Below are positions 22,251-64,000 of a stretch of DNA of 64,000 nucleotides, one piece after another. The notes beneath the pieces are model-generated. The model had not been told where the DNA came from and did no database searches. It saw nothing but the letters and a program-made list of their open reading frames with translations. How positions within the stretch are numbered: the first letter of the stretch is position 1; the number at the start of each line of letters is the position of its first letter. Position numbers and translations under genes: made by a program. Origin of the DNA: Vitrella brassicaformis CCMP3155 (taxonomy: Eukaryota > Protista > Chromerida); assembly GCA_001179505.1 (NCBI GenBank), contig CDMY01000850.1, positions 1 through 64,000 on the forward strand, written 5' to 3'.

Positions 22251-25200
22251 TCAGACACCAGGCACCGAGGGTCCCTCACTCACACTCTGCTCTTCCCCCT
22301 CTGTATCTGCCTCCCCCTCCAGTGCCTTGTCCTTGCCCCCCTTGGCCCTTGGGTCAGGGGTGTAGTCGACATCTCGCACCGTGGCAGCCGTCGGTCTCTC
22401 GGGGCTGCCCATCTCAGCTGCAGGCTGCTTCTCAGGGGACGATGGTGTAGGGGACTCCGGGGATGCGCCGTCATGGTCAGCCGGGGGCGGCTGGTCGGGG
22501 CTTGATGTGGCTGAGCCGGTGGCACCGCCGCTACCGCTGCTGCTGTCACTCTGGCCGATGATGGACGAGCCGCTCGGGGGCGGCTTGACCACCATCTTGC
22601 CGTCGGGCGTAAATTCTACCCACATGTCATCGTCGTCGTCCTCTGCATCATCACTGGGGCGCGGCAAGGCGGCAACTGGTTCGGGGTGGTCCGATCGCTT
22701 GGCCTCGGTCGCGAAGAATGCCCTGCGTGAAGGAAGGGTGGGGGAGAGGAGAAACAGAGACAGGGATGGATGGATGGTGTGGTGTGGTTCGGTTAGCTTA
22801 GGTTACGCACTTGAATTTGCGTTTCTCCTTGGCCTCCTCGTCCGCCTGGATCTTCTTGACCTCACGGAGCAGCTTACTGCATGGCATTGCATCCAGCGCA
22901 CACAAACGAAACAGAGAGAGAGATGCATGGATGGATGGATGCATGGATGGATGGTGGATGTCTTCACTGTTTTGCCTCGCCTGACCTACCTGAGTTGTGT
23001 GTCGTTCGGTGTGACGTCGAGTGCTCTGATGACGTCCTTCTTGGCCTCATCGAAGTCCTTGGACTCCAAATGGGCGCGCGCACGGCGGTAGAGGGCCTTG
23101 ACCAGGTGGGGGTCCACGGCCAGCACCTCCGTGCACCGGCGGATCGTCATGCCGTAGTGCCCCAACTCCAAATGACACGCCGCCTGCACCCACACACACA
23201 TGGGGTGGCGTGATGGGCTGGCCTGGGCTGGTGTGCCTTCATGGTGCGTCGACGCACCTCATTGAGTTTGCAGAGGGTAGTCAGGCGTTTCCTCTCCTGT
23301 TCGATCGCACGGTTGGGCGCCACGAAGGAGAGGACCCCCGTCGCCCGCGTGTAGTGTCGCACGGCGTCCTCACACTGCCCCGACCGGAACGACGTGTTGC
23401 CCTGCTGCTTGCACTTCTCACCCCTGCAGCCAACACACCAACACACATACGCTGTATGTGTCCGCTTTTCGGTCCTCGTCGCTTACTCTTCGAGCCGCTG
23501 TCTGGCCTCGTCTGTGGTGACGATGGCCGGCGCTGCCTCGCGGCGGGCTGTCAGGTTGATCGTCTCTGCTGGCTCACTGAACGAAGGAAGGACACAGACA
23601 ATGGAGTGGGTCACATGCTTGTGTAAGGGGGTTCGATCTCCACTTGACGTACGTGTCTTCCTCGATGATCTCTGCGTCGTATTTGCCGGAGGGCGGCACC
23701 TGGCCCAGCTGCCGCTGGTGAATCGTCTCGCCAACTGACCAGATCTTGATGTCGTCATCGATGCCTGACACACAAATGCATTCACGCGTGTGGACGCGTG
23801 TGTGTGCGAGAGTGTGTGTGTGTGCGAGAGTGTGTGTGTGTGTGAGTGTGTCGGTGTGTGCCTTGACCTCACCTGAGGATGCGAGTAGTGGTAGGGATGG
23901 GTGTGGTGCGATGGAGTTGACGATGACGCGGTCGCTCTTCATCTTGCGCAGCAGGCGGCCCGTCTTCTTGTCCCAGATGAAGATGTGACCGCAGTCGCCA
24001 CCCGTCGCCACGTAGCCCTCGTCGCAGAATATGAAACGAGCCTGTCGGTTTATATATTTGTGGCAATGAATCGAATGCATTACAGGTGCTGTGTTGTGTT
24101 GTGTTGGTCTGTGTGCTGTGGTGACCTCTCACCTCCTTTGCAAATGTTTCGCTGTTGAGCCGACCCTTGTAGCTCTGCACCACCTGCACACACACGCATT
24201 GCATTGCATTGCATTGCATTGCCGCCCAGAAAGACAACCGCAAACGCATCCATGTGTGTGTGGTTGTGTCATGTGGGTCACTTGTGAGCAGAGTTCGATC
24301 TCCCTGACAGTAATGGCGGTGTACGTCCGCGTGTCAAACATGCAGATGTCGCCAGGACTGCACATACACACACACATCAGACATTCAAATCGCCCATTGT
24401 GTTGTGTGTTGGTGTGGATCCACAACGCACCGGTAGTTGACGAGCAGTTCTCCCTTGGTGGACCAGTCGACGTCACTCACACCAACGGGCTCGCCGCGGA
24501 TGGTTCGACGAACAGTGTCCCTGCACTCACACACGCATGCTCAACACACGTACAAACGAAACATCTGAGCAATCATGCATGTCAATCGGTGGGGGCTGCA
24601 CAGACTTGATGCCGTATTCGCTCTCGGTGAGTTCCTTGGGCGCGCCCCAACGCTGCAGAGGCGTCTCGCTGACACACACAAACACACAGAGAGAGAGGGA
24701 TGAAAGGACCCACTTAGGGATGGCTGTGTGTGCACGGTGTGTCTGTACTTGTCCTTGCGGAGGTCATAGATGCGAACTATGGGATCGTTGCTGCCGACGG
24801 CGAACAGATGGGGATTGGATGGACTCACACGGACAGCGTTGCAGGCTATGTCTGCACACACAACAAAGGAGAGTGCTGTGTGGTGTTTTGTGGTGTGGTG
24901 TGGTGCGGTGTGGTACAAACCTCCGTTTGGTCCGTCGATGGTTTCGTTGAGACGGACGGCCACGGTACTCTTGTCAGTGCGCAGGTCGAACAAACGCACA
25001 TGAAACGGCTGACCGACCAGCACACAGCACGCAAGACATACACTCACTACACAGCTGACTGAGGTGAGGCGAGGAGAGAGGAGGCTAAGAGAAGACCGTC
25101 CGTCTGTGTGTGTGTAGTGCACCCACCTGTACAGTGCATAGGAAGAGGTTTCTGTCGTCGGGTAAGAAGTCGATCTTGACGGACATCGGCCCGGCGCCCC

Positions 25201-33929: not shown

Positions 33930-34725
33930 ATGATGGGCTGCAAGTACCTTCTGCTGCTCTTGGCTCTCGCTGTCGTGCCGCTCTCGTCTGCTCGCTCTCG
34001 CCTGCTGCCCGGCCTCGGCCTGTCGTCTGTGTTTGGTGGCGGTGGAGCCGCTGCACCGCCGGCGGGCATTGCACCAGAGGAGGAAGTCGCACCTGAAGGT
34101 CAGTCACACACAAACAGAACCAACACACTCCTAGCTGTCTCCCGTGCATCTGTGGCTGCATCTGTCTCTGTGTGTGTGTGTGTGTGTGTGTCAGAGGAGG
34201 CTGGTCCACTGACGTCTCTCGACTCGCTCATCGACGACCTGCACAAGGAAAGTGTGCGGCTCGATCAGGAGATAGCGGGTTTGAAGGTCCAGGGCGCGAC
34301 GCTGCCCGAGGAGCGAGCACTGAAGACGCCCCTGCCTGACGTCAAATCCACACTCGAAGCAGACAAGAGAGCCCCGCCCGCTGTCATCGTCGTCGGTCCG
34401 TCCACTCACACACAGCCAGCCATACACAGACAGACAGACAGATGAGAGACACAACCTCCCTCCCCGATCCACTCATGCATCAGAGCCCGAGGGTCCCTCA
34501 GCAGAGGAGCGGCTGGCAGCCCTCAAGAAGCGAGACTGCGAATACGAACGAGACCTCATCAAACTGCAGCAGGAAGGTCAGACAGGCAGAGAGACACGCA
34601 AAGGAGACACACACTCGTGCCGATGCATATGTGTGCGTGTCTCTGTGTGTGTGTGTTTAGAGGAGATGTTGCATCCGTCGGCAGCACACACACACACACA
34701 CAGAGGAGGGAGGGACACCCCCCCA

Positions 34726-34756
<31 letters not shown>

Positions 34757-35298
34757 GTCTCTCATCAGAGGCAGCACGCCAGCGACCAGCGAGAGCACCA
34801 GCGATCTGATGAGAGACGAGGAAAGAGTCCTGGACGCGATGATTTTGGTCGTCGGCCGGAACCTCAAGAGGCTCTTCGACGAGAGAGACAGACGCCTGCA
34901 TGCCTCCCCGACAGCAGCAGCCCGTCTGGCCCGGGCGCCGTGCGTCGGGTAAGTCACAAGGACAGCTGAGAGGGGAGGAGGGACGGCTGTGTGTGTATGT
35001 CTATCTCCATACATTTGTGTGCAGTGGTGGTGCTCTGTCTCGTTTGGGCGGCGCGTCGAGTCTCTCTCTATGTCTATCTCCATACATTTGTGTGCAGTGG
35101 TGGTGCTCTGTCTCGTTTGGGCGGCGCGTCGAGTCTCTCGGCTATCGAAGACGACATCACACGGCTGCAGACACAACTGGCAGACCTGCAAAGGGTGAGT
35201 TCGTGGACACGGTGACCACACACACAACCTGCTACCCATTCGCTGTCTGTGTGTCTCTGTCTATGTGTCTGAGTCAGCGACGAGCGGCTCTCGGCTGA
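33930..35298 (+). CDS. Hypothetical secreted coiled-coil protein (copy A), multi-exon
   Basis: Signal peptide MMGCKYLLLLLALAVVPLSSA. Spliced exons give LDSLIDDLHKESVRLDQEIAGLK and IEDDITRLQTQLADLQR|RRAALG*. Confidence 0.6.
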
Positions 35299-35710
35299 GT
35301 CATGTTGGAAGAGACACCGACAGACACAGACACAGACACAGACACAGACGTGTTGATGGACAGACGCGCGATGCATTTCAACTGAAGTGATATGTGAACG
35401 CTTACCACTTGCCCTTTTGTGTTATAGACAGATAGATAGACAGATAGACAGATAGATAGATGGATAGATCCACGTTCTTTCTGTCGACGTTTCTCTTCGA
35501 CATGCAGCTCGATCACACCCCCAGAATCTCTCACACGCTGAGGGTTCATATGTCTGCGCGTGTCTTTTTGGTCGGGTGTGGCTGGGAGGGAGGGAGGGTG
35601 GACTCATTTACTCATTTATTCGATCTTGTGTGCTCCACCACACATATGCACAAATGGATGGAAGCACACACTCGATCACAAATAAGTCCGCGATGGAGAC
35701 AGATAGCAAA
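34003..35710 (+). repeat. Left arm of an inverted segmental duplication (partner 40212-41620)
   Basis: Near-identical exons, introns and 3' flank recur reverse-complemented at 40212-41620. Confidence 0.95.
34996..35139 (+). repeat. 73-bp tandem duplication spanning a splice acceptor
   Basis: Unit TATGTCTATCTCCATACATTTGTGTGCAGTGGTGG...GAGTCTCTC starts at 34996 and 35069; single copy in the inverted arm. Confidence 0.95.
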
Positions 35711-36239
35711 TTGCCGCCATAGACACCCTCGCAAACCTCCACAATGCACACACCACACACATACACAGCCGGCGCAGCACGAGCGAAAACGGCGAGCGGT
35801 GTGTCACGCAGCGCTTGCATTCACTCGCAATGCCATCATATCTCATGTGTCAAGACCGAGACGGATCAGATGCGCAAGCATTCGTGGGAGATGTGTTGCT
35901 CTTTTCCCTAGTTGAGGCGCTTGTTGGGCATAAATGCATTCGTGAGGGCCGTGTGTGGGGCGGCGTGGTGGTGTAGGGGGTGGGTAAAGCGACGACACGC
36001 ACGCACACGAGCCACATATACAGCCCACGCAAGCACTGCTGTCCATCGTGCACATGTGTGTATGGACCGATGAGTTCGGTCGATAGGGCTACGTCTGTGT
36101 GTCTCACAGATGCACTGTGGCAGCGCTGCGCTATCTACCTCCGCCACTTCGTCGTGGCCGTCCTCCTCCACCCCCACCTGGCACATATGGGGGGTGGAAT
36201 GCACACAGCCATCCATCCATCGACCGATGACCCGCACAA

Positions 36240-38974
36240 TGAATGGAAGCAGCTGGTCTAACTTGACCCCTCCGCTGTCTCGCCTTCGTCCGTCATCCGC
36301 TGCTGCTGCTGCTGCTGCTGCTACTGGCGGGCTATCGTCCCACTCGTTCCCCAACTCGCCATCCACATCTGCACACACACACACACACACACACAGAAAA
36401 GGCACACACACATCCGGCTGGACACAAGACACACCCCGCTCACCCGCCCCCCTCTTGCCTGTGTTGGTGAACTCCACCATTGGCTCGCCATCGTCGTCGT
36501 CATCATGCTGCACACTGGGGCGCGGTGGGGCGGCGGCAGCTTCTGAGTGGGCCGATCGCTTGGCGTCAGCCTCGAAGAACGCCCTGCATCAATGGGGAGA
36601 GAGAGCGAAATGGACAAGAGCGGTGTGATGAATATGTGGCTTGGTAACACACTTGAGTTTCCGTCTCTCCTTGGCCTCCTCGTCCGCCTGGATCTTCTTG
36701 ACCTCACGCAGCAACTTACTGCATCAAACAATACAAGCAGAGAGACAGACCATGAAATCGCGTTCGCCTTGGCTCCCTTCGTGCCCTCAATGTCTGCCTT
36801 CCCTGAGGCACCCACCTGAGTTCTGTGTCGTTGGGTGCGATGTCTAGTGCCATGATGACGTCCCTCTTGGCCTCACCGAAGCCCTTGCACTCCAGATGGG
36901 CACGCGCACGGCGGTAGAGGGCCTTGACCAGGTGGGGGTCCACGGCCAGCACCTCCGTGCACCGGCGGATCGTCATGGCGTAGTCCTTCAACTCCAAATA
37001 ACACGCCGCTGCAAGAAATCGACACAACAGACACACACATGGTGTGGCGTATTGGGCGTTCGTGTGCCTGCTACGGGGATACCTCATTGAGTTTGCACTT
37101 GGTAGCCAGGCGGTTCCTCTCCTCCTCTATGGCGGGGCTGGGCGCCATAAAGGCGAGGAGGCGGGCTGCCTTCGTGTACTGTTGCAGGGCGTCCAGACAC
37201 TCCCGCGACTTGAAGGATATGTTGCCCTGGTGCTTGCATGCCTCAGCCCTGTTGCCATCACACCAACACACAATAGATGGGTGTGAGTGTTTGCTCTCTG
37301 GTCCTAGTCACCCACTCGTCAAGTCGCTGTTTGGCCTCGTCTGTGGTGCCGATGGCCGGCGCTCCCTCGCCCTCTCCGTCGATCTCGTTCAACTCGTCCT
37401 GCTCCGAGTCGCCATCAATGTCTGCACACACACACACACACACACATACATATGAGTAAGACACCTAGCAAGGCGGGCTGGACACACCACACAGACCACT
37501 TACCCTCACCACTATCGCCATCGTCCTCCTCCGAGTCACCATCCATATCTGTACACACAAAACACACACCGATTCATCCGACCGACACACTGAGGTGGAG
37601 GCGGCTGGCTGCACACGCACCCTCATCAGCGACTTTCTCTTGCTGGTTGACCACCATGTCTGCGATGGTGCTGCCCAGCGGGCCGCCCACCAGAGAGGCG
37701 GTGGCGGGCCGGCGGTCCTTGAAGGCAGCCGATGCATCACCTACTGGCGGCTCGTTGGTGACGACAGAAACAGTCACTGCATTCAGCAGAACAACACGTC
37801 AAAGGATGGCTCACTCAGCATATAATCTGCTATCTTGTTCCCTCACCTATGTTCGTCTTGTTCTGCGTGTTGTTGGGGAAGATACACAGATCGATCCATG
37901 CGACGAATGGTCTGTCGAACGGCGTCAGCAGCAGAGTCCGATACTCGAGAGGGGGATGGCTACTGTCCACCCTGCTCGCCACGACGGCGGTGCATCCGTT
38001 AGGGGGCTGGTGGGGCGAGTGGTTGAGGAGGCCGTCCAGCACACCGTCGTGAGCATGACTGAGGAGACCAACACATAACAGAGGAAGAGGCCCTGATGGA
38101 TGGATCGATGTGTGTCTGTCTGAGTGTGGTGTTTCCTGCGTACCGGTCCACGTAAACCCATGGAGTGACGCCCCAATTCGCCACTGGAGGGGGCAGGATC
38201 ACCCTCATGACGAAGGCCGACGCCGAGGCATCAGTGATCACCTCAGCACCGGCCGTCCAGCTGCCCCCCTGCTCGCGGATTCGGCATGTGACGGGCGGGT
38301 TGCCGTTGATGGTGTGTGTGTGGTACGGGTGGGCGGGGGGGAGGGGGGGGTTGATGTCCAGCTCGAAGCCCGGCTCGTCCTTGATGGCACGCACACCGCC
38401 GCCCGGCTGGTCGAACAGCTCAAAACGGCCGTAGTGGCCGCCGAAGTTGACGTGTCTGCCGACCATCTTCCACAACGCAATCACACCCGCATCGGCCAAA
38501 TACGCCTACACAGACAGACAGACAGACAGACAGCTGAGTGCCACCTACCCCGCCCCACGCTCATCTGCCCACCTGTTTGCTATCGTGACGCTGCATGTCG
38601 GCCACAGCCAGTGTGATCGGCAGCTGACAGAGGCCCCTCTGCCCCGCGAAGCGCAGCGCATTGGCCACCTCGGTCCACTGCTGCGTGTCCATCAGCCAAA
38701 TGGCCTTCAACACGAGCTTGGTCTCCAGCTGCGAATCGAATGCGATGATGCCGTGGAGCTGTTTGGCCGCCAGGCAGCGCCCCAGCCGATTGCGGAGGAC
38801 GGCAGCCGAGAAGTCTATCTGCGATAGGAAGGCGGCCGTGCATCTGAGTATGCCGATATCCTCGAGTGTGTGGATGGCATCCCGCCCCAGGCTGTGGATG
38901 AAATCGATGGCCTCGTTCTCCCTGGCCGGCGGCAGGGCCTGTCGGCTGCTGGGCACCGTCACGTCATTGCCCAT
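36240..38974 (-). CDS. Chimeric gene: lineage-specific multicopy-family N-terminus, acidic mini-exons, TPR tail paralogous to the WD40-TPR gene
   Basis: MGNDVTVP...IDFSAAVLRNRL...KAIWLMDTQQWTEVANAL, then VRAIKDEPGFELDINPPLP. Phase-1 introns keep the frame through DMDGDSEEDD/DIDGDSEQD exons into APAIGTTDEAKQRLDE and CKHQGNISF...KALYRRARAH. The 3' end is approximate. Confidence 0.7.
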
Positions 38975-39047
38975 AGGCTAATCCACCCTCTGCGAAGCGC
39001 GTAAATTCGCATCCGCATTTACACAAAACGGCCCCTAGTTTTTCGTG

Positions 39048-40205
39048 ATGCGCCAGCTGTCGCTCTTTCTTCCCATCCGTCAGGCAAGAGCATTCACGTC
39101 AAGACGTGCCGAGCACTTCCTTCCCGTTCCACCATTCGATGGCATCTGCAAGAGGGGCGCCCAGGTTTCCACACACGGTCGCGTCAAGCACCATAATGGT
39201 CCTCTGACGTCAGGATGGACCAACGGCAGCGGATATCTATGCACCAAGATCAACGCCAAAAGTTACCTCGTGCATCGGCTCGTTGCGGAAACCTTCCTTG
39301 CCCAGCAGAAGGAAGATCTGCAGCGTCGCACGGAGTCCGCACACGCACTGCAGGTGGATCACATCGACGGCAACAAAAAGAACAACGCCGTCGACAACTT
39401 GCAGTGGTGATCGCAAGACAGATGCATCGGATTTCACGTGGATTGTTGTTGCTGTTCGTTGCTGTTGGCTGCCTGTAGGCTCGATACGAAGCAGCATCGC
39501 GAGAAGACTGCCAGGGAGATAGCTCGTCCCAAGCCCCTCTTTGCCTCGTCAAGGCCTGTCGTCGCTAGGTGTCGCCACACAGGGAGGATCACATCCTTCC
39601 AGCAGGCGGCCATCGCCGCGCGACACTTCCAAGTCCACAGCCTTACCATGTTCAAGACCTTGATTGGCCGCTACCGCCCTTCCTTCCTCAGAGACTACAC
39701 ATTGACGTATGCGGCCCATCGCAATCGGGACGGCGAGCGCTTCAGGACCATCAGCTTTGTCAAAGAGGCATACCACAGCCTCCCACCCTCTCAGAGGCCG
39801 TCGCGCCTCCCCAAAGTCTCCAATCAAGGCAAGTCGACATCAAGACCATCCAGACAGGCAGACAGGCAGGCTTGGTTGTGACGTGCAGGCCGCGTTCGTC
39901 ATGTGAATGGGCACGTGACGGAGGGCACGTACCTGTCCACAGGCTATCGTCGTGTCACGTTGAGGGGGCGCAATTTCCTCGTGCATCGGCTGGTGGCAGA
40001 AGTGTGGCTTGCAGACGAGAAGGCCAAATGGCTGGAGAAGGGGTGCACAGAGGATGAGCTAGAAGTGGACCACATTGACGGGCGGAGGGATAACAATTGC
40101 AGTCAGAACCTAAGATGGCTGCCAAAAAAGCAGCACCAAAGCATGACGGCGAGACGCACATGGGAGAGGAGGAAAGGGGGTAGATCGACGGGGCAGGGGA
40201 TGTAG
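39048..40205 (+). CDS. Spliced tandem NUMOD4-HNH / NUMOD1-like / NUMOD4-HNH homing-endonuclease-type protein (341 aa) with mitochondrial-type leader
   Basis: Exons 39048-39406, 39479-39828 and 39889-40205 total 1026 nt in one frame. Motifs VSTHGRVK...YLVHRLVAETF...VDHIDGNKKNNAVDNLQW|LDTKQH and VSNQG|RVR...FLVHRLVAEVW...VDHIDGRRDNNCSQNLRWLPKKQH. Leader MRQLSLFLPIRQARAFTSRR. Confidence 0.88.
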
Positions 40206-40211
40206 GATCCG

Positions 40212-40866
40212 TTTTGCTATCTGTCTCCATCGCGGACTTATTTGTGATCGATCTGCATGTCGAAGAAAAAACGTGTGTCTATCAAAAGGGCAGTTGGTAA
40301 GCGTTCACATATCACTTCAGTTGAAATGCATCGCGCGTCTGTCCATCAACACGTCTGTGTCTGTGTCTGTGTCTGTCGGTGTCTCTTCCAACATGACTCA
40401 GCCGAGAGCCGCTCGTCGCTGACTCAGACACATAGACAGAGACACACAGACAGCGAATGGGTAGCAGGTTGTGTGTGTGGTCACCGTGTCCACGAACTCA
40501 CCCTTTGCAGGTCTGCCAGTTGTGTCTGCAGCCGTGTGATGTCGTCGTCGATAGCCGAGAGACTCGACGCGCCGCCCAAACGAGACAGAGCACCACCACT
40601 GCACACAAATGTATGGAGATAGACATACACACACAGCCGTCCCTCCTCCCCTCTCAGCTGTCCTTGTGACTTACCCGACGCACGGCGCCCGGGCCAGACG
40701 GGCTGCTGCTGTCGGGGAGGCATGCAGGCGTCTGTCTCTCTCGTCGAAGAGCCTCTTGAGGTTCCGGCCGACGACCAAAATCATCGCGTCCAGGACTCTT
40801 TCCTCGTCTCTCATCAGATCGCTGGTGCTCTCGCTGGTCGCTGGCGTGCTGCCTCTGATGAGAGAC

Positions 40867-40897
<31 letters not shown>

Positions 40898-41620
40898 TGG
40901 GGGGGTGTCCCTCCCTCCTCTGTGTGTGTGTGTGTGTGCTGCCGACGGATGCAACATCTCCTCTGAACACACACACGAAGACACGCACACATATGCATCG
41001 GCACGAGTGTGTGTCTCCTTTGCGTGTCTCTCTGCCTGTCTGACCTTCCTGCTGCAGTTTGATGAGGTCTCGTTCGTATTCGCAGTCTCGCTTCTTGAGG
41101 GCTGCCAGCCGCTCCTCTGCTGAGGGACCCTCGGGCTCTGATGCATGAGTGGATCGGGGAGGGAGGTTGTGTCTCTCATCTGTCTGTCTGTCTGTCTGTG
41201 TATGGCTGGCTGTGTGTGAGTGGACGGACCGACGACGATGACAGCGGGCGGGGCTCTCTTGTCTGCTTCGAGTGTGGATTTGACGTCAGGCAGGGGCGTC
41301 TTCAGTGCTCGCTCCTCGGGCAGCGTCGCGCCCTGGGCCTTCAAACCCGCTATCTCCTGATCGAGCCGCACACTTTCCTTGTGCAGGTCGTCGATGAGCG
41401 AGTCGAGAGACGTCAGTGGACCAGCCTCCTCTGACACACACACACAGGGACACACACACAGATGCAGCCACAGATGCACGGGAGACAGCTAGGGGTGTGT
41501 TGTTTCTGTTTGTGTGTGACTGACCTTCAGGTGCGACTTCCTCTTCGGGTGCAATGCCCACTGGCGGTGCAGCGGCTCCACCGCCACCAAACACAGACGA
41601 CAGGCCGAGGCCAGGAAGTC
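40212..41620 (-). pseudogene. 5'-truncated inverted copy (copy B) of the secreted coiled-coil gene
   Basis: Homology to 34003-35710 starts at LPGLGLSS; the signal peptide and ATG are missing and no nearby in-frame ATG was seen. Confidence 0.8.
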
Positions 41621-42003
41621 GTGTCGCTGTTCGTATTCGCCAACGTGCTGCAGCTACTTCCCAACATGAGCAAAGCGGCAAACCGACACACGGTGCACAT
41701 GTCTTTGTTCATCCATTCGCACGTGTGCAGGTTTCCCCCCTGCACATCGTCCATAAGATACCGCACGACTATCCCACTTAAAATTAGCAAGCTTGGGTGT
41801 CCAGGCACATTCGGATCGAGCTCAAGATGAACGACGAGTTGTGGTGCTGGAGTCGCGTCAAAACGCACGACCTCGCCATTCCTCCATCCGATACTTGACG
41901 AAACCAACAATTGGCCGGACGCCGGCAGTGGATGAGGCGGATGACACATGACAGCGTGTGTGAGCTTTAATAGTCATGACGGTCATAGCATCAATCGTCA
42001 CGA

Positions 42004-62084: not shown

Positions 62085-64000
62085 ATGGGCAACAACCACA
62101 CTGCGGACCGCCACGGTGCCGTTATCGACGACCACACACTCGACTTCCTCCACAAAGCCGACAGAGATGCCCTCCACACGTATGCAAACCACACACGAAT
62201 CAGTGAGGGAGGGGGAGTGGCAGTTGACAGCTGTGTGTGTGTTTGGGTGTGTTGTGCCATCTGTGTATGTGTGCAGCCGGTCGGAGGTCGGCAGCCTCAG
62301 AGTCACGGCCCGTTTCCTCTATGAAGTCGACTTCTCGGCCGCCGTCCTGAGCAGTCGACTCAATCGCTGCCTGGCGGCCAAGGGACTGCACGCCATCATC
62401 GCATTCGACGGTCAGCTGGACCGCCCTCTGCTGCTGAAGGCCATCTGGCTGGTGGACACACAGCAGTGGACCGAGGTGGCCAATGCGCTGAAGTTGGCGA
62501 GGCAGAGGGGCTTCTGTCAGCTGCCCATCACACTCTCTGTGGCCGACCTGGAGCGACACGGTAGCAAACAGGTGGGCAGATGAGCGTGGGGCGGGGTAGG
62601 TGGCACTCATCGATCTGTCTGTCTGTCTGTGTAGGCGTATTTGGCCGATGTGCGTGTGATTGCGTTGTGGAACATGCTCGGCCGGCACGTCGACTTCGGC
62701 GGTGACTACGGCCGTTTTGAGCTGTTCGACCAGCCGGGCGGCGGTGTGCGTGCCCTCAAGGACGAGCCGGGCTTCGAGCTGGACATCAACCCGCCCCTCC
62801 CCCCCGCCCACCCGTACCACACACACATCATCAACGACAACCCCCCCGTCAGATGCACAATCCGCCGGCAGGGGGGCAGCAGCTGGACGGCCGATGGTGA
62901 GGAGATCACTAATGCCTCGGCGTCGGCGTTCATCATGAGGAGCATCTTGGCGGACCCTCCACTGGCCAATTTGGGCATGACTCAATTGGTTTGGGTGGAT
63001 CGGTACGCAGGGCAGACCACACTCAGGCAGACACACATCCATCCATCCATCCATCAGGGCCTCTCCCCTCTGTTATGTGTTGGTCTCCTCAGGCGTGCTC
63101 ACGGCGGTATGCTGGACGGCCTCCTCAACCAGTCGCCCCACCAGCCCCCAACGGATGCACCGCCGTCGTGGCGAGCAGGGGTGACGGCGTGGATCCTCCT
63201 ATGGAGACTCGGCGGCTGCTGCTGACGCCGTTCGACGGCCCATTCGTCGCGTGTGTCACTCTCATCACCTGGGCCGGCACGACCATGGGTAAGAAAGGGA
63301 ACAGAGTTGTTTTGCTGATTGAGCCGTTTTCTGACGTGTGCTGTGTCGCTGAAGGAGTGGGTGTTGCTGTTGTCACCCACGAGCCGCCAGTAGGTGATGC
63401 ATCGGCTGCCTTCAAGGACCGCCGTCCGGCCACCGCCCCTCTGGTGGGCGGCGCGCTGGGCAGCACCATCGCAGACATGGTGGTCAACCAACAGGAGACA
63501 GTCGCTGATGCGGGTGAATGTGCAGTCGCCGCCTCCACCTCGGTGTGTCTGTCGGATGAATCGGCGTGTGTGTGGTTCGCAGATGAGGGTGCGGGTGGCG
63601 ACGATGGCGATGGTGGTGAGGGTAAGTGGTCTGTGTGCGGTGCCCAGCCCGCCTTGCTAGGTGTCATACTCGTGTGTATGTGTGTGTGTGCAGAGGATGA
63701 TGATGACAGTGACGATGACGGCGACAGCGATGAGGGTGAGTGGAATACATGTGTTTGTGTGTGTGTGGTTGGGCCCATTTGTATGTTTGCGTGTCTTGAG
63801 TGCGCAGATGTAGATGGCGACATCGACGGAGAGGGCAATGGCGATGGCCGCCAGCAGCAGCAGCAGCATCAGCATGATGAAGAGGGTGAGATGGGGAAAG
63901 GGGATGACCTAGATCAGAGCAACATACACGCACTCATTGTGTGCGTCATGGCCATCTTTGATGTATGCAGGTTGATCGACTGCGACACTGGTCGGTGGGG
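62085..64000 (+). CDS. Second paralogue of the lineage-specific family gene at 36240-38974; apparent frameshift at ~63150; runs off the window
   Basis: VDFSAAVLSSRL...KAIWLVDTQQWTEVANAL and VRALKDEPGFELDINPPLP, same acidic mini-exons. CAGCCCCCAAC here versus CAGCCCCCTAAC in the paralogue gives a stop at 63225. Confidence 0.7.

What the first reader, a model, noticed from the sequence alone, without database searches (positions are those of the whole stretch)
39048..40205. Intron-containing nuclear gene for a double HNH homing-endonuclease-type protein with a mitochondrial-type leader
Seen: three ORF pieces join through a 72-bp GT-AG and a 60-bp GC-AG intron into one intact 341-aa protein. It has two NUMOD4-HNH modules, each keeping HRLVA, VDHIDG..xNN..NL.W and a downstream His, separated by a NUMOD1/IENR1-like HTH (RPVVAR...SF..AAIAARHF...DYTLTY). 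The N-terminus MRQLSLFLPIRQARAFTSRR is Arg-rich with no acidic residues. Established: NUMOD4-HNH proteins are typical of phage, giant viruses and mobile introns. Inference: a mobile or viral nuclease became intronised and may be imported into the mitochondrion, where myzozoan mtDNA is small, fragmented and recombinogenic. That would be a candidate domesticated organellar nuclease or DNA-binding system.
Basis: partly seen in the sequence, partly recalled or inferred. Interest (0 to 1): 0.82.

Follow-up and report, generated by a model that had tools for sequence, protein, structure and literature searches.

The report
Giant-virus-type double HNH nuclease gene
A nuclear, intron-containing gene of the alga Vitrella encodes an intact two-headed DNA-cutting enzyme that descends from giant-virus-type homing endonucleases and carries a short organelle-style address tag. 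It belongs to a small gene family that is already auto-annotated in public databases, and where the enzyme acts has not been tested.

Summary
Window 39048-40205 (+) is Vitrella brassicaformis CCMP3155 gene CEM35287.1 / UniProt A0A0G4GWA2.

The protein has three parts:
- a 21-residue basic, acid-free leader;
- a complete I-HmuI-like unit (strands, HNH, helix-turn-helix; VIA Z 14.1 against 1U3E);
- a second NUMOD4-like/HNH module without its own HTH.

Both active sites keep the D-H...N...H residues.

It belongs to a chromerid-only clade (at least 6 Vitrella and 7 Chromera genes; support 100/98) that expanded separately in each alga. The nearest relatives are tandem HNH genes of giant viruses; dinoflagellates carry similar genes. 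Family evidence points to long host retention:
- host-like GC3 (0.70 against 0.14-0.28 in viral kin);
- introns that differ between copies;
- one paralogue found spliced in cDNA;
- dN/dS 0.13 for another paralogue.

Leaders are present in 12 of 13 chromerid proteins and absent from viral kin.

Not shown: transcripts of this copy (only DNA runs were served), and any localisation. The mitochondrial reading stays inference. This scan had already found the family on other pieces of this genome.

Verdict: a real gene and a new variant of a known kind, of moderate interest.

The parts
39048..39406 (+). Exon 1: start codon, leader and most of HNH module 1 (residues 1-119 plus 2 nt of W120)
   Evidence: identical to public model P0025
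39048..39110 (+). Leader, residues 1-21. It has 5 Arg and no acidic residue, and 15 of 21 residues are R/A/L/S. It is a possible targeting presequence with an R-x-F|T motif.
   Evidence: AF2 pLDDT is below 50 for residues 1-16. I-HmuI homology starts at residue 22. Viral kin lack it.
39360..39362 (+). Codon of His105, the predicted general base of HNH site 1 (VDH motif)
   Evidence: Invariant in all 51 aligned tandem HNH proteins. The family profile aligns it with I-HmuI His75.
39407..39478 (+). Intron 1: 72 nt, GT..AG, phase 2, in-frame TGA at 39408
   Evidence: The HNH_3 profile and the family alignment run across it without a gap. Its length is typical of 21 cDNA-supported Vitrella introns, 59-105 nt.
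39479..39828 (+). Exon 2: end of HNH site 1 (His126), helices, helix-turn-helix domain (residues 137-200) and start of module 2
39528..39719 (+). Predicted DNA-binding HTH domain, residues 137-200 (beta-beta-helix-helix-beta)
   Evidence: VIA: I-HmuI chain residues 1-173 align to model 22-200 with Z 14.1. The I-TevI DNA-binding domain aligns to 137-199 with Z 5.4. There is no Pfam, PHROG or PDB sequence hit for exon 2 alone.
39829..39888 (+). Intron 2: 60 nt, GC..AG (donor AAG|GCAAGT), phase 1, in-frame TGA at 39879, holds a GACA-type microsatellite
   Evidence: Removing it restores VSNQGRVRH, which aligns without a gap to all paralogues. GC donors were 0 of 21 in the cDNA-supported sample, so this is the less certain junction.
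39889..40205 (+). Exon 3: HNH module 2 (residues 237-341), basic C-terminal helix, stop TAG at 40203-40205
40071..40073 (+). Codon of His298, the predicted general base of HNH site 2
   Evidence: Aligned to I-HmuI His75. Present in 50 of the 51 aligned proteins; the one exception (P0038) is gapped across all of module 2.

Best explanation
This is an intact, host-maintained nuclear gene (Vitrella brassicaformis CEM35287.1). It is one of a chromerid-specific family that descends from giant-virus-type tandem I-HmuI-like HNH endonucleases.

The product is a single chain with two beta-beta-alpha-metal active sites. Residues 22-200 form a full I-HmuI-like unit: N-terminal strands, HNH, helices and an HTH. 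Residues ~225-335 form a second NUMOD4-like/HNH module that has lost its own HTH.

Inferred mechanism: I-HmuI is a monomeric strand-specific nickase. By analogy, one HTH plus the strand elements would position the chain on DNA. Each HNH site would then cut one strand, giving a double-strand break or paired nicks.

Shown:
- the sequence, the gene model as a public annotation, and the domain content;
- intact catalytic residues;
- viral affinity and host-like composition;
- family-wide retention.

Inferred:
- splicing of this copy;
- nuclease activity;
- that the 21-residue basic leader sends the enzyme into an organelle, the mitochondrion being the likeliest. I put organellar targeting at roughly 0.5-0.6.
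For: - Gene model: equals the public protein.
- Domains: HNH_3 twice; PHROG and PADLOC homing-endonuclease families at E 1e-20 to 1e-22.
- I-HmuI likeness: the family profile aligns to I-HmuI residues 5-171 of 174 at E 3e-14. The AF2 model has pLDDT 89.6. I-HmuI is the only significant Foldseek PDB match, E 1.8e-9; VIA gives Z 14.1 over model residues 22-200.
- Catalytic residues: D/H, N and H are kept in both sites in chromerids.
- Phylogeny: the chromerid clade has support 100/98 and Vitrella is monophyletic at 99/94.
- Viral kin: relatives sit in giant-virus contigs, one with RNR, a rhodopsin-family gene, Erv1 and TFIIB, another next to PolB with a histone and TFIIS. Atlas look-alike clusters are mostly Nucleocytoviricota.
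- Composition: GC3 is 0.70, against 0.14-0.28 in viral kin.
- Neighbourhood: ordinary host genes such as Tcp11, Rrp15p and OTU. The family has no terminal repeats.
- Expression in the family: paralogue P0026 is an unbroken ORF on a cDNA-type contig that lacks 21 introns.
- Selection: dN/dS is 0.13 for paralogue CEM17527 against an environmental relative.
- Leaders: 12 of 13 chromerid proteins have one and viral kin have none.
Against: - No RNA evidence for this copy. The runs served were DNA and show only the unspliced form. No transcript-derived protein clusters with it.
- Intron 2 uses a rare GC donor (0 of 21 in the cDNA sample).
- No localisation predictor or experiment. The amphipathic moment of the leader is only moderate (0.52). 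A basic C-terminal helix could equally serve nuclear import or DNA binding.
- The family expanded separately in each alga, and at least one public paralogue model (CEM24381) needs implausible mini-introns. This fits birth-and-death turnover better than a single essential function.
- Activity of either site is untested.
Confidence: 0.7

Rival explanations
1. The enzyme acts outside organelles, in the nucleus or cytoplasm. It could work in host DNA transactions or as a weapon against invading giant-virus DNA. The N-terminal extension would then be a disordered basic tail or a nuclear signal, not a presequence.
For: The leader is short with only moderate amphipathicity. The C-terminus is also basic. 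Lineage-specific expansion into many diverged paralogues is typical of conflict-driven families. The source lineage is giant viruses.
Against: N-terminal extensions that are acid-poor, Arg/Ser-rich and conserved in composition but not in sequence occur in 12 of 13 chromerid proteins, and in dinoflagellate homologues as well. Viral kin lack them. That is the usual signature of targeting peptides. PADLOC gives only generic homing-endonuclease and HNH matches.
Confidence: 0.2
2. The family is still a selfish element: free-standing homing endonuclease genes spreading in the nuclear genome. Under this reading the copy here is parasitic, not domesticated.
For: All characterised relatives are homing endonucleases. 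The genome holds several copies, some reported broken. This locus is bracketed by a 1.4-1.7 kb inverted repeat at 97-98% identity.
Against: Vitrella paralogues are only 40-46% identical, and no near-identical copies exist (this protein's 90% cluster has a single member). Flanks at the six loci are unrelated host genes, and the inverted repeat is absent from the other five. Copies carry spliceosomal introns, one position being shared by four paralogues. dN/dS is 0.13. Composition is fully host-like.
Confidence: 0.08
3. The copy is a dead relic. The two interruptions are not spliced, the in-frame TGA codons terminate translation, and the public model is an annotation convenience.
For: There is no transcript evidence for this copy. 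Another paralogue's public model hides a defect behind implausible introns (earlier notes). Intron 2 has a GC donor.
Against: Both interruptions have exact splice boundaries, typical Vitrella lengths and a pyrimidine-rich 3' end. Removing them restores gap-free alignment to all paralogues and to the HNH_3 profile. The three exons have no frameshift or stop, and every catalytic residue is kept.
Confidence: 0.07
4. The leader targets the plastid rather than the mitochondrion.
For: Chromerids have unusual plastid genomes. Transit peptides are also basic and rich in hydroxylated residues.
Against: Chromerid plastid import needs a signal peptide ahead of the transit peptide (PMC6668581). The first 20 residues have no adequate hydrophobic core: the best 8-residue Kyte-Doolittle mean is 1.6.
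Confidence: 0.06

Closest known systems
I-HmuI (PDB 1U3E), HNH homing endonuclease of Bacillus phage SPO1
   Same: Residues 22-200 are colinear with the whole enzyme: N-terminal strands, HNH motif with Asp-His and the downstream metal ligand, helices and a C-terminal HTH. Profile E is 3e-14 and VIA Z is 14.1 over 160 of 174 residues.
   Different: I-HmuI has one active site and is intron-encoded in a phage. Here a second NUMOD4-like/HNH module follows. The last metal ligand is His rather than Asn. The gene is nuclear, has spliceosomal introns, and carries a 21-residue leader.
Tandem HNH_3 proteins of giant viruses (Nucleocytoviricota), uncharacterised metagenomic families of about 350 aa
   Same: Two HNH modules separated by a spacer of about 95-125 residues, alignable over 76-88% of the length. 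They are the nearest outgroups in the tree and lie in viral contigs.
   Different: The viral proteins start directly at the first module with an acidic N-terminus. They keep a 70-190-residue tail after module 2, where the precomputed Pfam hits place NUMOD1 in one viral example. They mostly have Asn or Gln at the last ligand, are AT-rich and have no introns. The chromerid proteins gained a leader, lost the tail, have His at both ligand positions and are GC-rich with introns.
Tandem HNH genes of dinoflagellates (Biecheleria, Symbiodinium natans, Amphidinium)
   Same: Nuclear or transcriptome-encoded tandem HNH proteins, several with basic, acid-poor N-terminal extensions. A single clade with chromerids is not rejected (AU p 0.27).
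   Different: They keep the C-terminal tail and an Asn ligand, and fall in a different part of the tree.

Membership tests
Pfam HNH_3 (PF13392) | Profile match above the gathering score | tested here: met
   49.5 bits against a cut-off of 24.8, two stretches. Each exon alone scores 27.8 and 30.9 bits.
Pfam NUMOD4 (PF07463) | Profile match above the gathering score | tested here: inconclusive
   22.7 bits against a cut-off of 23.4, at residues 232-262. 6 of 8 family members match at E up to 1, best 4.8e-6.
Pfam NUMOD1 / I-HmuI_NUMOD-like HTH | Profile match in the inter-module region | tested here: not met
   No hit for this protein or for exon 2 alone. Only 2 of 8 paralogues hit PF22083 (E 0.006) and 1 of 8 hits NUMOD1 (E 0.2). 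The predicted fold does resemble the I-HmuI and I-TevI HTH (Z 14.1 for the whole unit, Z 5.4 for the domain). So it works like one, but sequence membership is not shown.
I-HmuI-type HNH homing endonuclease | Beta-beta-alpha-metal site with the catalytic His and metal ligands | tested here: met
   VDH...N...H is present in both modules and aligns to I-HmuI D74/H75/N96.
I-HmuI-type HNH homing endonuclease | Site-specific nicking or cleavage activity | not testable with these tools
   Needs recombinant enzyme.
I-HmuI-type HNH homing endonuclease | Mobile context (intron-borne or free-standing in a phage or virus genome) and homing | tested here: not met
   The gene lies between host genes in a nuclear scaffold. 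The family has no shared flanks or terminal repeats.
Spliceosomal introns | Canonical boundaries and species-typical length | tested here: met
   GT..AG of 72 nt and GC..AG of 60 nt. 21 cDNA-supported Vitrella introns are 59-105 nt.
Spliceosomal introns | Spliced transcripts of this gene | tested here: inconclusive
   Only DNA runs were served, and they show the unspliced form. Paralogue P0026 is spliced on a cDNA-type contig.
Mitochondrial presequence | N-terminal, basic, acid-free, Arg/Ala/Leu/Ser-rich, amphipathic | tested here: inconclusive
   Composition is met: +5 net charge, no acidic residue in the first 21, and 15 of 21 residues are R/A/L/S. The hydrophobic moment is moderate at 0.52. 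No trained predictor was available.
Mitochondrial presequence | Import into mitochondria | not testable with these tools
   Needs a reporter fusion or organelle proteomics.
Endogenous giant-virus insert | Neighbouring viral genes and virus-like composition | tested here: not met
   Neighbours are host genes. GC3 is 0.70 against 0.14-0.28 in viral kin.

The most novel reading that the evidence does not exclude
Nuclear-encoded tandem HNH nucleases, captured from giant viruses and fitted with presequences, are imported into mitochondria of chromerids and dinoflagellates. There they make the breaks that drive the fragmented, scrambled, recombining mtDNA shared by these lineages.
Probability: 0.12. 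Interest if true: 0.85.

Novelty: new variant of a known kind. Interest (0 to 1): 0.5.

Why it matters
HNH homing endonucleases are normally selfish genes of phages, viruses and organelle introns. Here a tandem form has lived long enough in alveolate nuclear genomes to gain introns, host codon usage and an N-terminal address tag, and it has been kept with both active sites intact.

If the tag is a mitochondrial presequence, the family gives a concrete, testable candidate for what cuts and reshuffles the odd mitochondrial DNA of chromerids and dinoflagellates. A review attributes that fragmented, scrambled state possibly to extensive recombination (PMC8554336); I found no agent proposed in the papers I searched.

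A single-chain two-site HNH enzyme is also of interest as a compact double-strand cutter.

The gene itself is already in public databases with an automatic name, and this scan has met the family before. What is new is the architecture, the origin and the leader pattern, not the existence of the gene.

Tried and rejected
- **RNA evidence.** The one run search returned only DNA-type runs (contigs up to 225 kb, unspliced), so the junctions could not be tested.
- **Exon 2 alone.** It has no Pfam, PHROG or PDB sequence match. Its nature came only from the family profile and the fold.
- **Exon 1 word search.** It found only single-module proteins of 126-197 aa because of the length window.
- **Phage records.** 256 matched, but none covers 80% or more of the protein, so cultured phages carry single modules. 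One Atlas cluster labelled Uroviricota may hold tandem forms.
- **Literature.** No paper on this family. The supplements of PMC6668581 do not list the family's Chromera ids.
- **Second copy in the window.** None found. Weak tblastn hits at 60.2-60.9 kb belong to an actin-related gene.
- **Element-like flanks.** Next to the gene there are only (GACA)n repeats. The large inverted repeat around the locus is not shared by the other five loci, so I rejected it as a family terminal repeat.
- **Upstream neighbour.** I tested whether it travels with HNH genes. It does not.
- **Neighbour ORFs.** No Pfam hits. NCBIfam also gives none for the protein.
- **Single myzozoan origin.** Neither shown nor rejected.
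- **dN/dS for this copy.** Not possible, because no close relative exists and the paralogues are saturated.

Full report
**What is there**

The window is positions 1-64000 of scaffold CDMY01000850.1 of Vitrella brassicaformis CCMP3155 (GCA_001179505.1), and window coordinates equal record coordinates.

At 39048-40205 on the plus strand three ORF pieces lie in one frame. They are interrupted by two stretches:
- a 72-nt stretch (39407-39478, GT..AG, TGA at 39408);
- a 60-nt stretch (39829-39888, donor AAG|GCAAGT..CAG, TGA at 39879).

The joined product came back from the database as P0025.

DNA contigs from two studies cover 38939-40242 without a single difference. The sequence, including the in-frame stops, is therefore correct.

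**Are the introns real?**

No RNA run was served for this stretch. The runs laid were genomic and unspliced, and no transcript-derived protein clusters with P0025. Splicing of this copy is therefore inferred. The inference rests on four points.
- The Pfam HNH_3 match in exon 1 stops at profile position 38 of 46, exactly at intron 1, and continues in exon 2.
- After removal of both stretches the protein aligns to seven paralogues without any gap at either junction.
- The boundaries are canonical, and the lengths fall within the 59-105 nt of 21 introns defined by a cDNA-type contig at a paralogous locus.
- That contig (L003, from run ERR558152) carries paralogue P0026 as an unbroken ORF together with a fully spliced neighbour. 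At least one family member is therefore transcribed and spliced.

Intron 2 is the weaker junction. All 21 reference introns are GT-AG. However, its donor fits the usual GC-donor consensus, and no in-frame GT alternative exists.

**The protein**

HNH_3 matches twice. PHROG and PADLOC homing-endonuclease families match at E 1e-20 to 1e-22. The two modules are 42% identical.

The only solved relative by sequence is I-HmuI (1U3E). A profile of eight family members aligns to I-HmuI residues 5-171 of 174, covering module 1 and the whole inter-module region, at E 3e-14.

An AlphaFold2 model built on 51 homologues is confident (pLDDT 89.6, pTM 0.68). I-HmuI is its only significant Foldseek PDB match (E 1.8e-9). 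VIA-align gives Z 14.1, with model residues 22-200 on chain residues 1-173. Residues 137-199 also resemble the I-TevI DNA-binding domain (Z 5.4).

NUMOD4 is just under threshold for this protein, at 22.7 against 23.4 bits.

Both sites keep Asp-His, Asn and a downstream His (D104/H105/N113/H126 and D297/H298/N305/H319). The His general base is present in every aligned row that covers the module. The one exception is P0038, which is gapped across module 2.

**The leader**

An in-frame TAG lies four codons upstream of the ATG, and the next Met is residue 177. Residues 1-21 must therefore be translated if module 1 is made.

These residues carry five Arg and no acidic residue. Their hydrophobic moment is moderate (0.52) and they have no signal-peptide-like core. 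The model leaves them disordered.

Viral homologues start 16-17 residues before the conserved VS motif with an acidic N-terminus. In contrast, 12 of 13 chromerid proteins have 31-112 residues there, and these are basic, rich in hydroxylated residues and mostly acid-poor at the N-terminus. Several dinoflagellate homologues have similar extensions.

This pattern, with composition conserved and sequence not, is what targeting peptides look like. No trained predictor or localisation data were available, and predictors have only moderate precision in chromerids (PMC6668581). Chromerid plastid import needs a signal peptide first (same paper), which is missing here. The mitochondrion is therefore the likelier organelle. 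I put organellar targeting at roughly 0.5-0.6.

**Family and origin**

An exhaustive HMMER search with exon 1 found 2199 relatives. Nearly all of the best 150 have two or more HNH stretches.

The closest are:
- five Vitrella paralogues (CEM13225, CEM15617, CEM24249, CEM17527, CEM24381);
- seven Chromera proteins (Cvel_10696, Cvel_23441 and Cvel_1474; the other four are UniRef/EukProt entries for which no gene id was shown).

In a careful maximum-likelihood tree the 13 chromerid proteins form one clade (100/98). Vitrella (99/94) and Chromera each form one side of a branch. So the family expanded separately in each alga from one ancestral gene. Vitrella paralogues are only 40-46% identical to this gene, so the duplications are old.

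The nearest outgroups and the bulk of the wider family are tandem HNH proteins of about 350 aa in giant-virus contigs. One lies in a 472-kb contig with ribonucleotide reductase, a rhodopsin-family gene, Erv1 and TFIIB. Another lies directly downstream of DNA polymerase B, in a contig that also has a histone and TFIIS. Atlas look-alike clusters are mostly Nucleocytoviricota.

Cultured phages carry only single-module versions. Dinoflagellates (Biecheleria, Symbiodinium natans, Amphidinium) also encode tandem forms. A single clade of chromerid plus dinoflagellate-type sequences is not recovered, but it is not rejected either (AU p 0.27).

Compared with viral and dinoflagellate proteins, the chromerid proteins show four differences:
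- they gained the leader;
- they lost the 70-190-residue tail after module 2;
- they have His rather than Asn or Gln at the last ligand position in both modules;
- their nearest viral relatives share that His in at least one module.

**Domesticated or selfish?**

Evidence for retention:
- GC3 is 0.70, like the host, against 0.14-0.28 in viral kin.
- The neighbours are ordinary host genes: Tcp11, Rrp15p, OTU, and a divergent gene whose start codon is 73 nt away.
- The six Vitrella loci share no flanks.
- Intron positions differ between copies. One position, just after the NL.W motif of module 2, is shared by four paralogues, two of which are truncated there in the public models.
- Paralogue CEM17527 compared with an environmental relative gives dN/dS 0.13 (14 synonymous and 6 non-synonymous changes), with the intron conserved in place.

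Evidence that complicates a simple domestication story:
- The expansions are lineage-specific.
- The public model of CEM24381 needs two implausible mini-introns. This fits earlier notes of this scan about frameshifted copies.

I read this as a host-maintained family with birth-and-death turnover, not an active element.

**Local peculiarity**

The HNH gene and its upstream neighbour are bracketed by an inverted repeat of 1.4-1.7 kb at 97-98% identity (34011-35710 and 40213-41612). The repeat carries most of two oppositely oriented genes. The inner end of its right arm is 8 nt after the HNH stop codon.

Read contigs show about twice the word depth there. None of the other five loci has such a repeat. 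It is therefore a recent local inverted duplication, not a terminal repeat of the family.

**Comparison with the known, and verdict**

The gene works like an I-HmuI-type HNH endonuclease and passes the sequence and fold tests for that catalytic family. It fails the context test for a homing endonuclease, because it is not in a mobile setting.

The tandem architecture exists in giant viruses but is uncharacterised. The nuclear version, with introns, a leader and no tail, is a new variant.

The gene is already in public databases under an automatic name, and I found no paper that discusses it. This scan had already flagged the same family on other pieces of this genome.

The link to fragmented, recombining mtDNA in chromerids and dinoflagellates (PMC8554336) is an attractive hypothesis, but it is untested.

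Noticed in passing
window 34011-35710 and 40213-41612: An inverted repeat of 1.4-1.7 kb at 97-98% identity brackets the HNH gene and its upstream neighbour. The arms carry most of two oppositely oriented annotated genes (33930-35298 plus strand, 252 aa; 40398-41747 minus strand, 254 aa; no Pfam on record). The inner end of the right arm is 8 nt after the HNH stop codon. DNA contigs show about 2x word depth on the arm. The repeat is absent from the other five HNH loci. It could allow inversion of the 4.5-kb segment between the arms.
   Followed up: partly
window 36135-38974 (minus strand); 22628-23541; 62288-63690: The upstream neighbour (619 aa, no Pfam) has paralogous stretches elsewhere in the window: 84% identity inverted at 62288-63690 and 75% direct at 22628-23541. 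Near-identical variants also appear in read contigs over 38650-38908. This is a multi-copy gene family of unknown function that is not linked to HNH genes.
   Followed up: partly
L008:6140-6260 and L010:6096-6230: The public models of paralogues CEM24249 and CEM24381 stop right after NL.WVT(R/K). A GT..AG intron follows, and the reading frame then continues through the missing catalytic His (KMHARL / KVHAQL). The JGI fragment P0029 has the spliced form. The models are truncated by a missed intron, at the position where CEM13225 and CEM15617 have theirs.
   Followed up: partly
L010:5221-5329: The public model of CEM24381 uses two mini-introns (60 and 46 nt) separated by 3 nt. This looks like an annotation patch over a frame defect, as earlier notes of this scan say about a 7-bp duplication.
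   Followed up: no
proteins P0035, P0036, P0312: Dinoflagellates (Biecheleria cincta transcriptome, Amphidinium carterae, Symbiodinium natans) encode tandem HNH proteins, several with basic, acid-poor N-terminal extensions. P0048 and P0040, whose organism is unknown (long metagenome contigs in the same part of the tree), have hydrophobic N-termini that look like signal peptides.
   Followed up: partly
L011:4707-8955: In a giant-virus-like metagenome contig the tandem HNH gene sits 17 nt downstream of the DNA polymerase B gene. This is a typical spot for a free-standing homing endonuclease.
   Followed up: no
L015 versus L009: An environmental Vitrella-like contig (ERZ893784) is about 95% identical to the CEM17527 locus. 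It lacks about 3.4 kb, including an annotated 695-aa gene, upstream of the HNH gene. This is a structural difference between relatives.
   Followed up: no
window 38500-38541, 40353-40461, 40857-40906: (GACA)n-type microsatellites lie in introns and between genes, with very high word depth in reads. Intron 2 of the HNH gene contains a short one (39844-39869).
   Followed up: no
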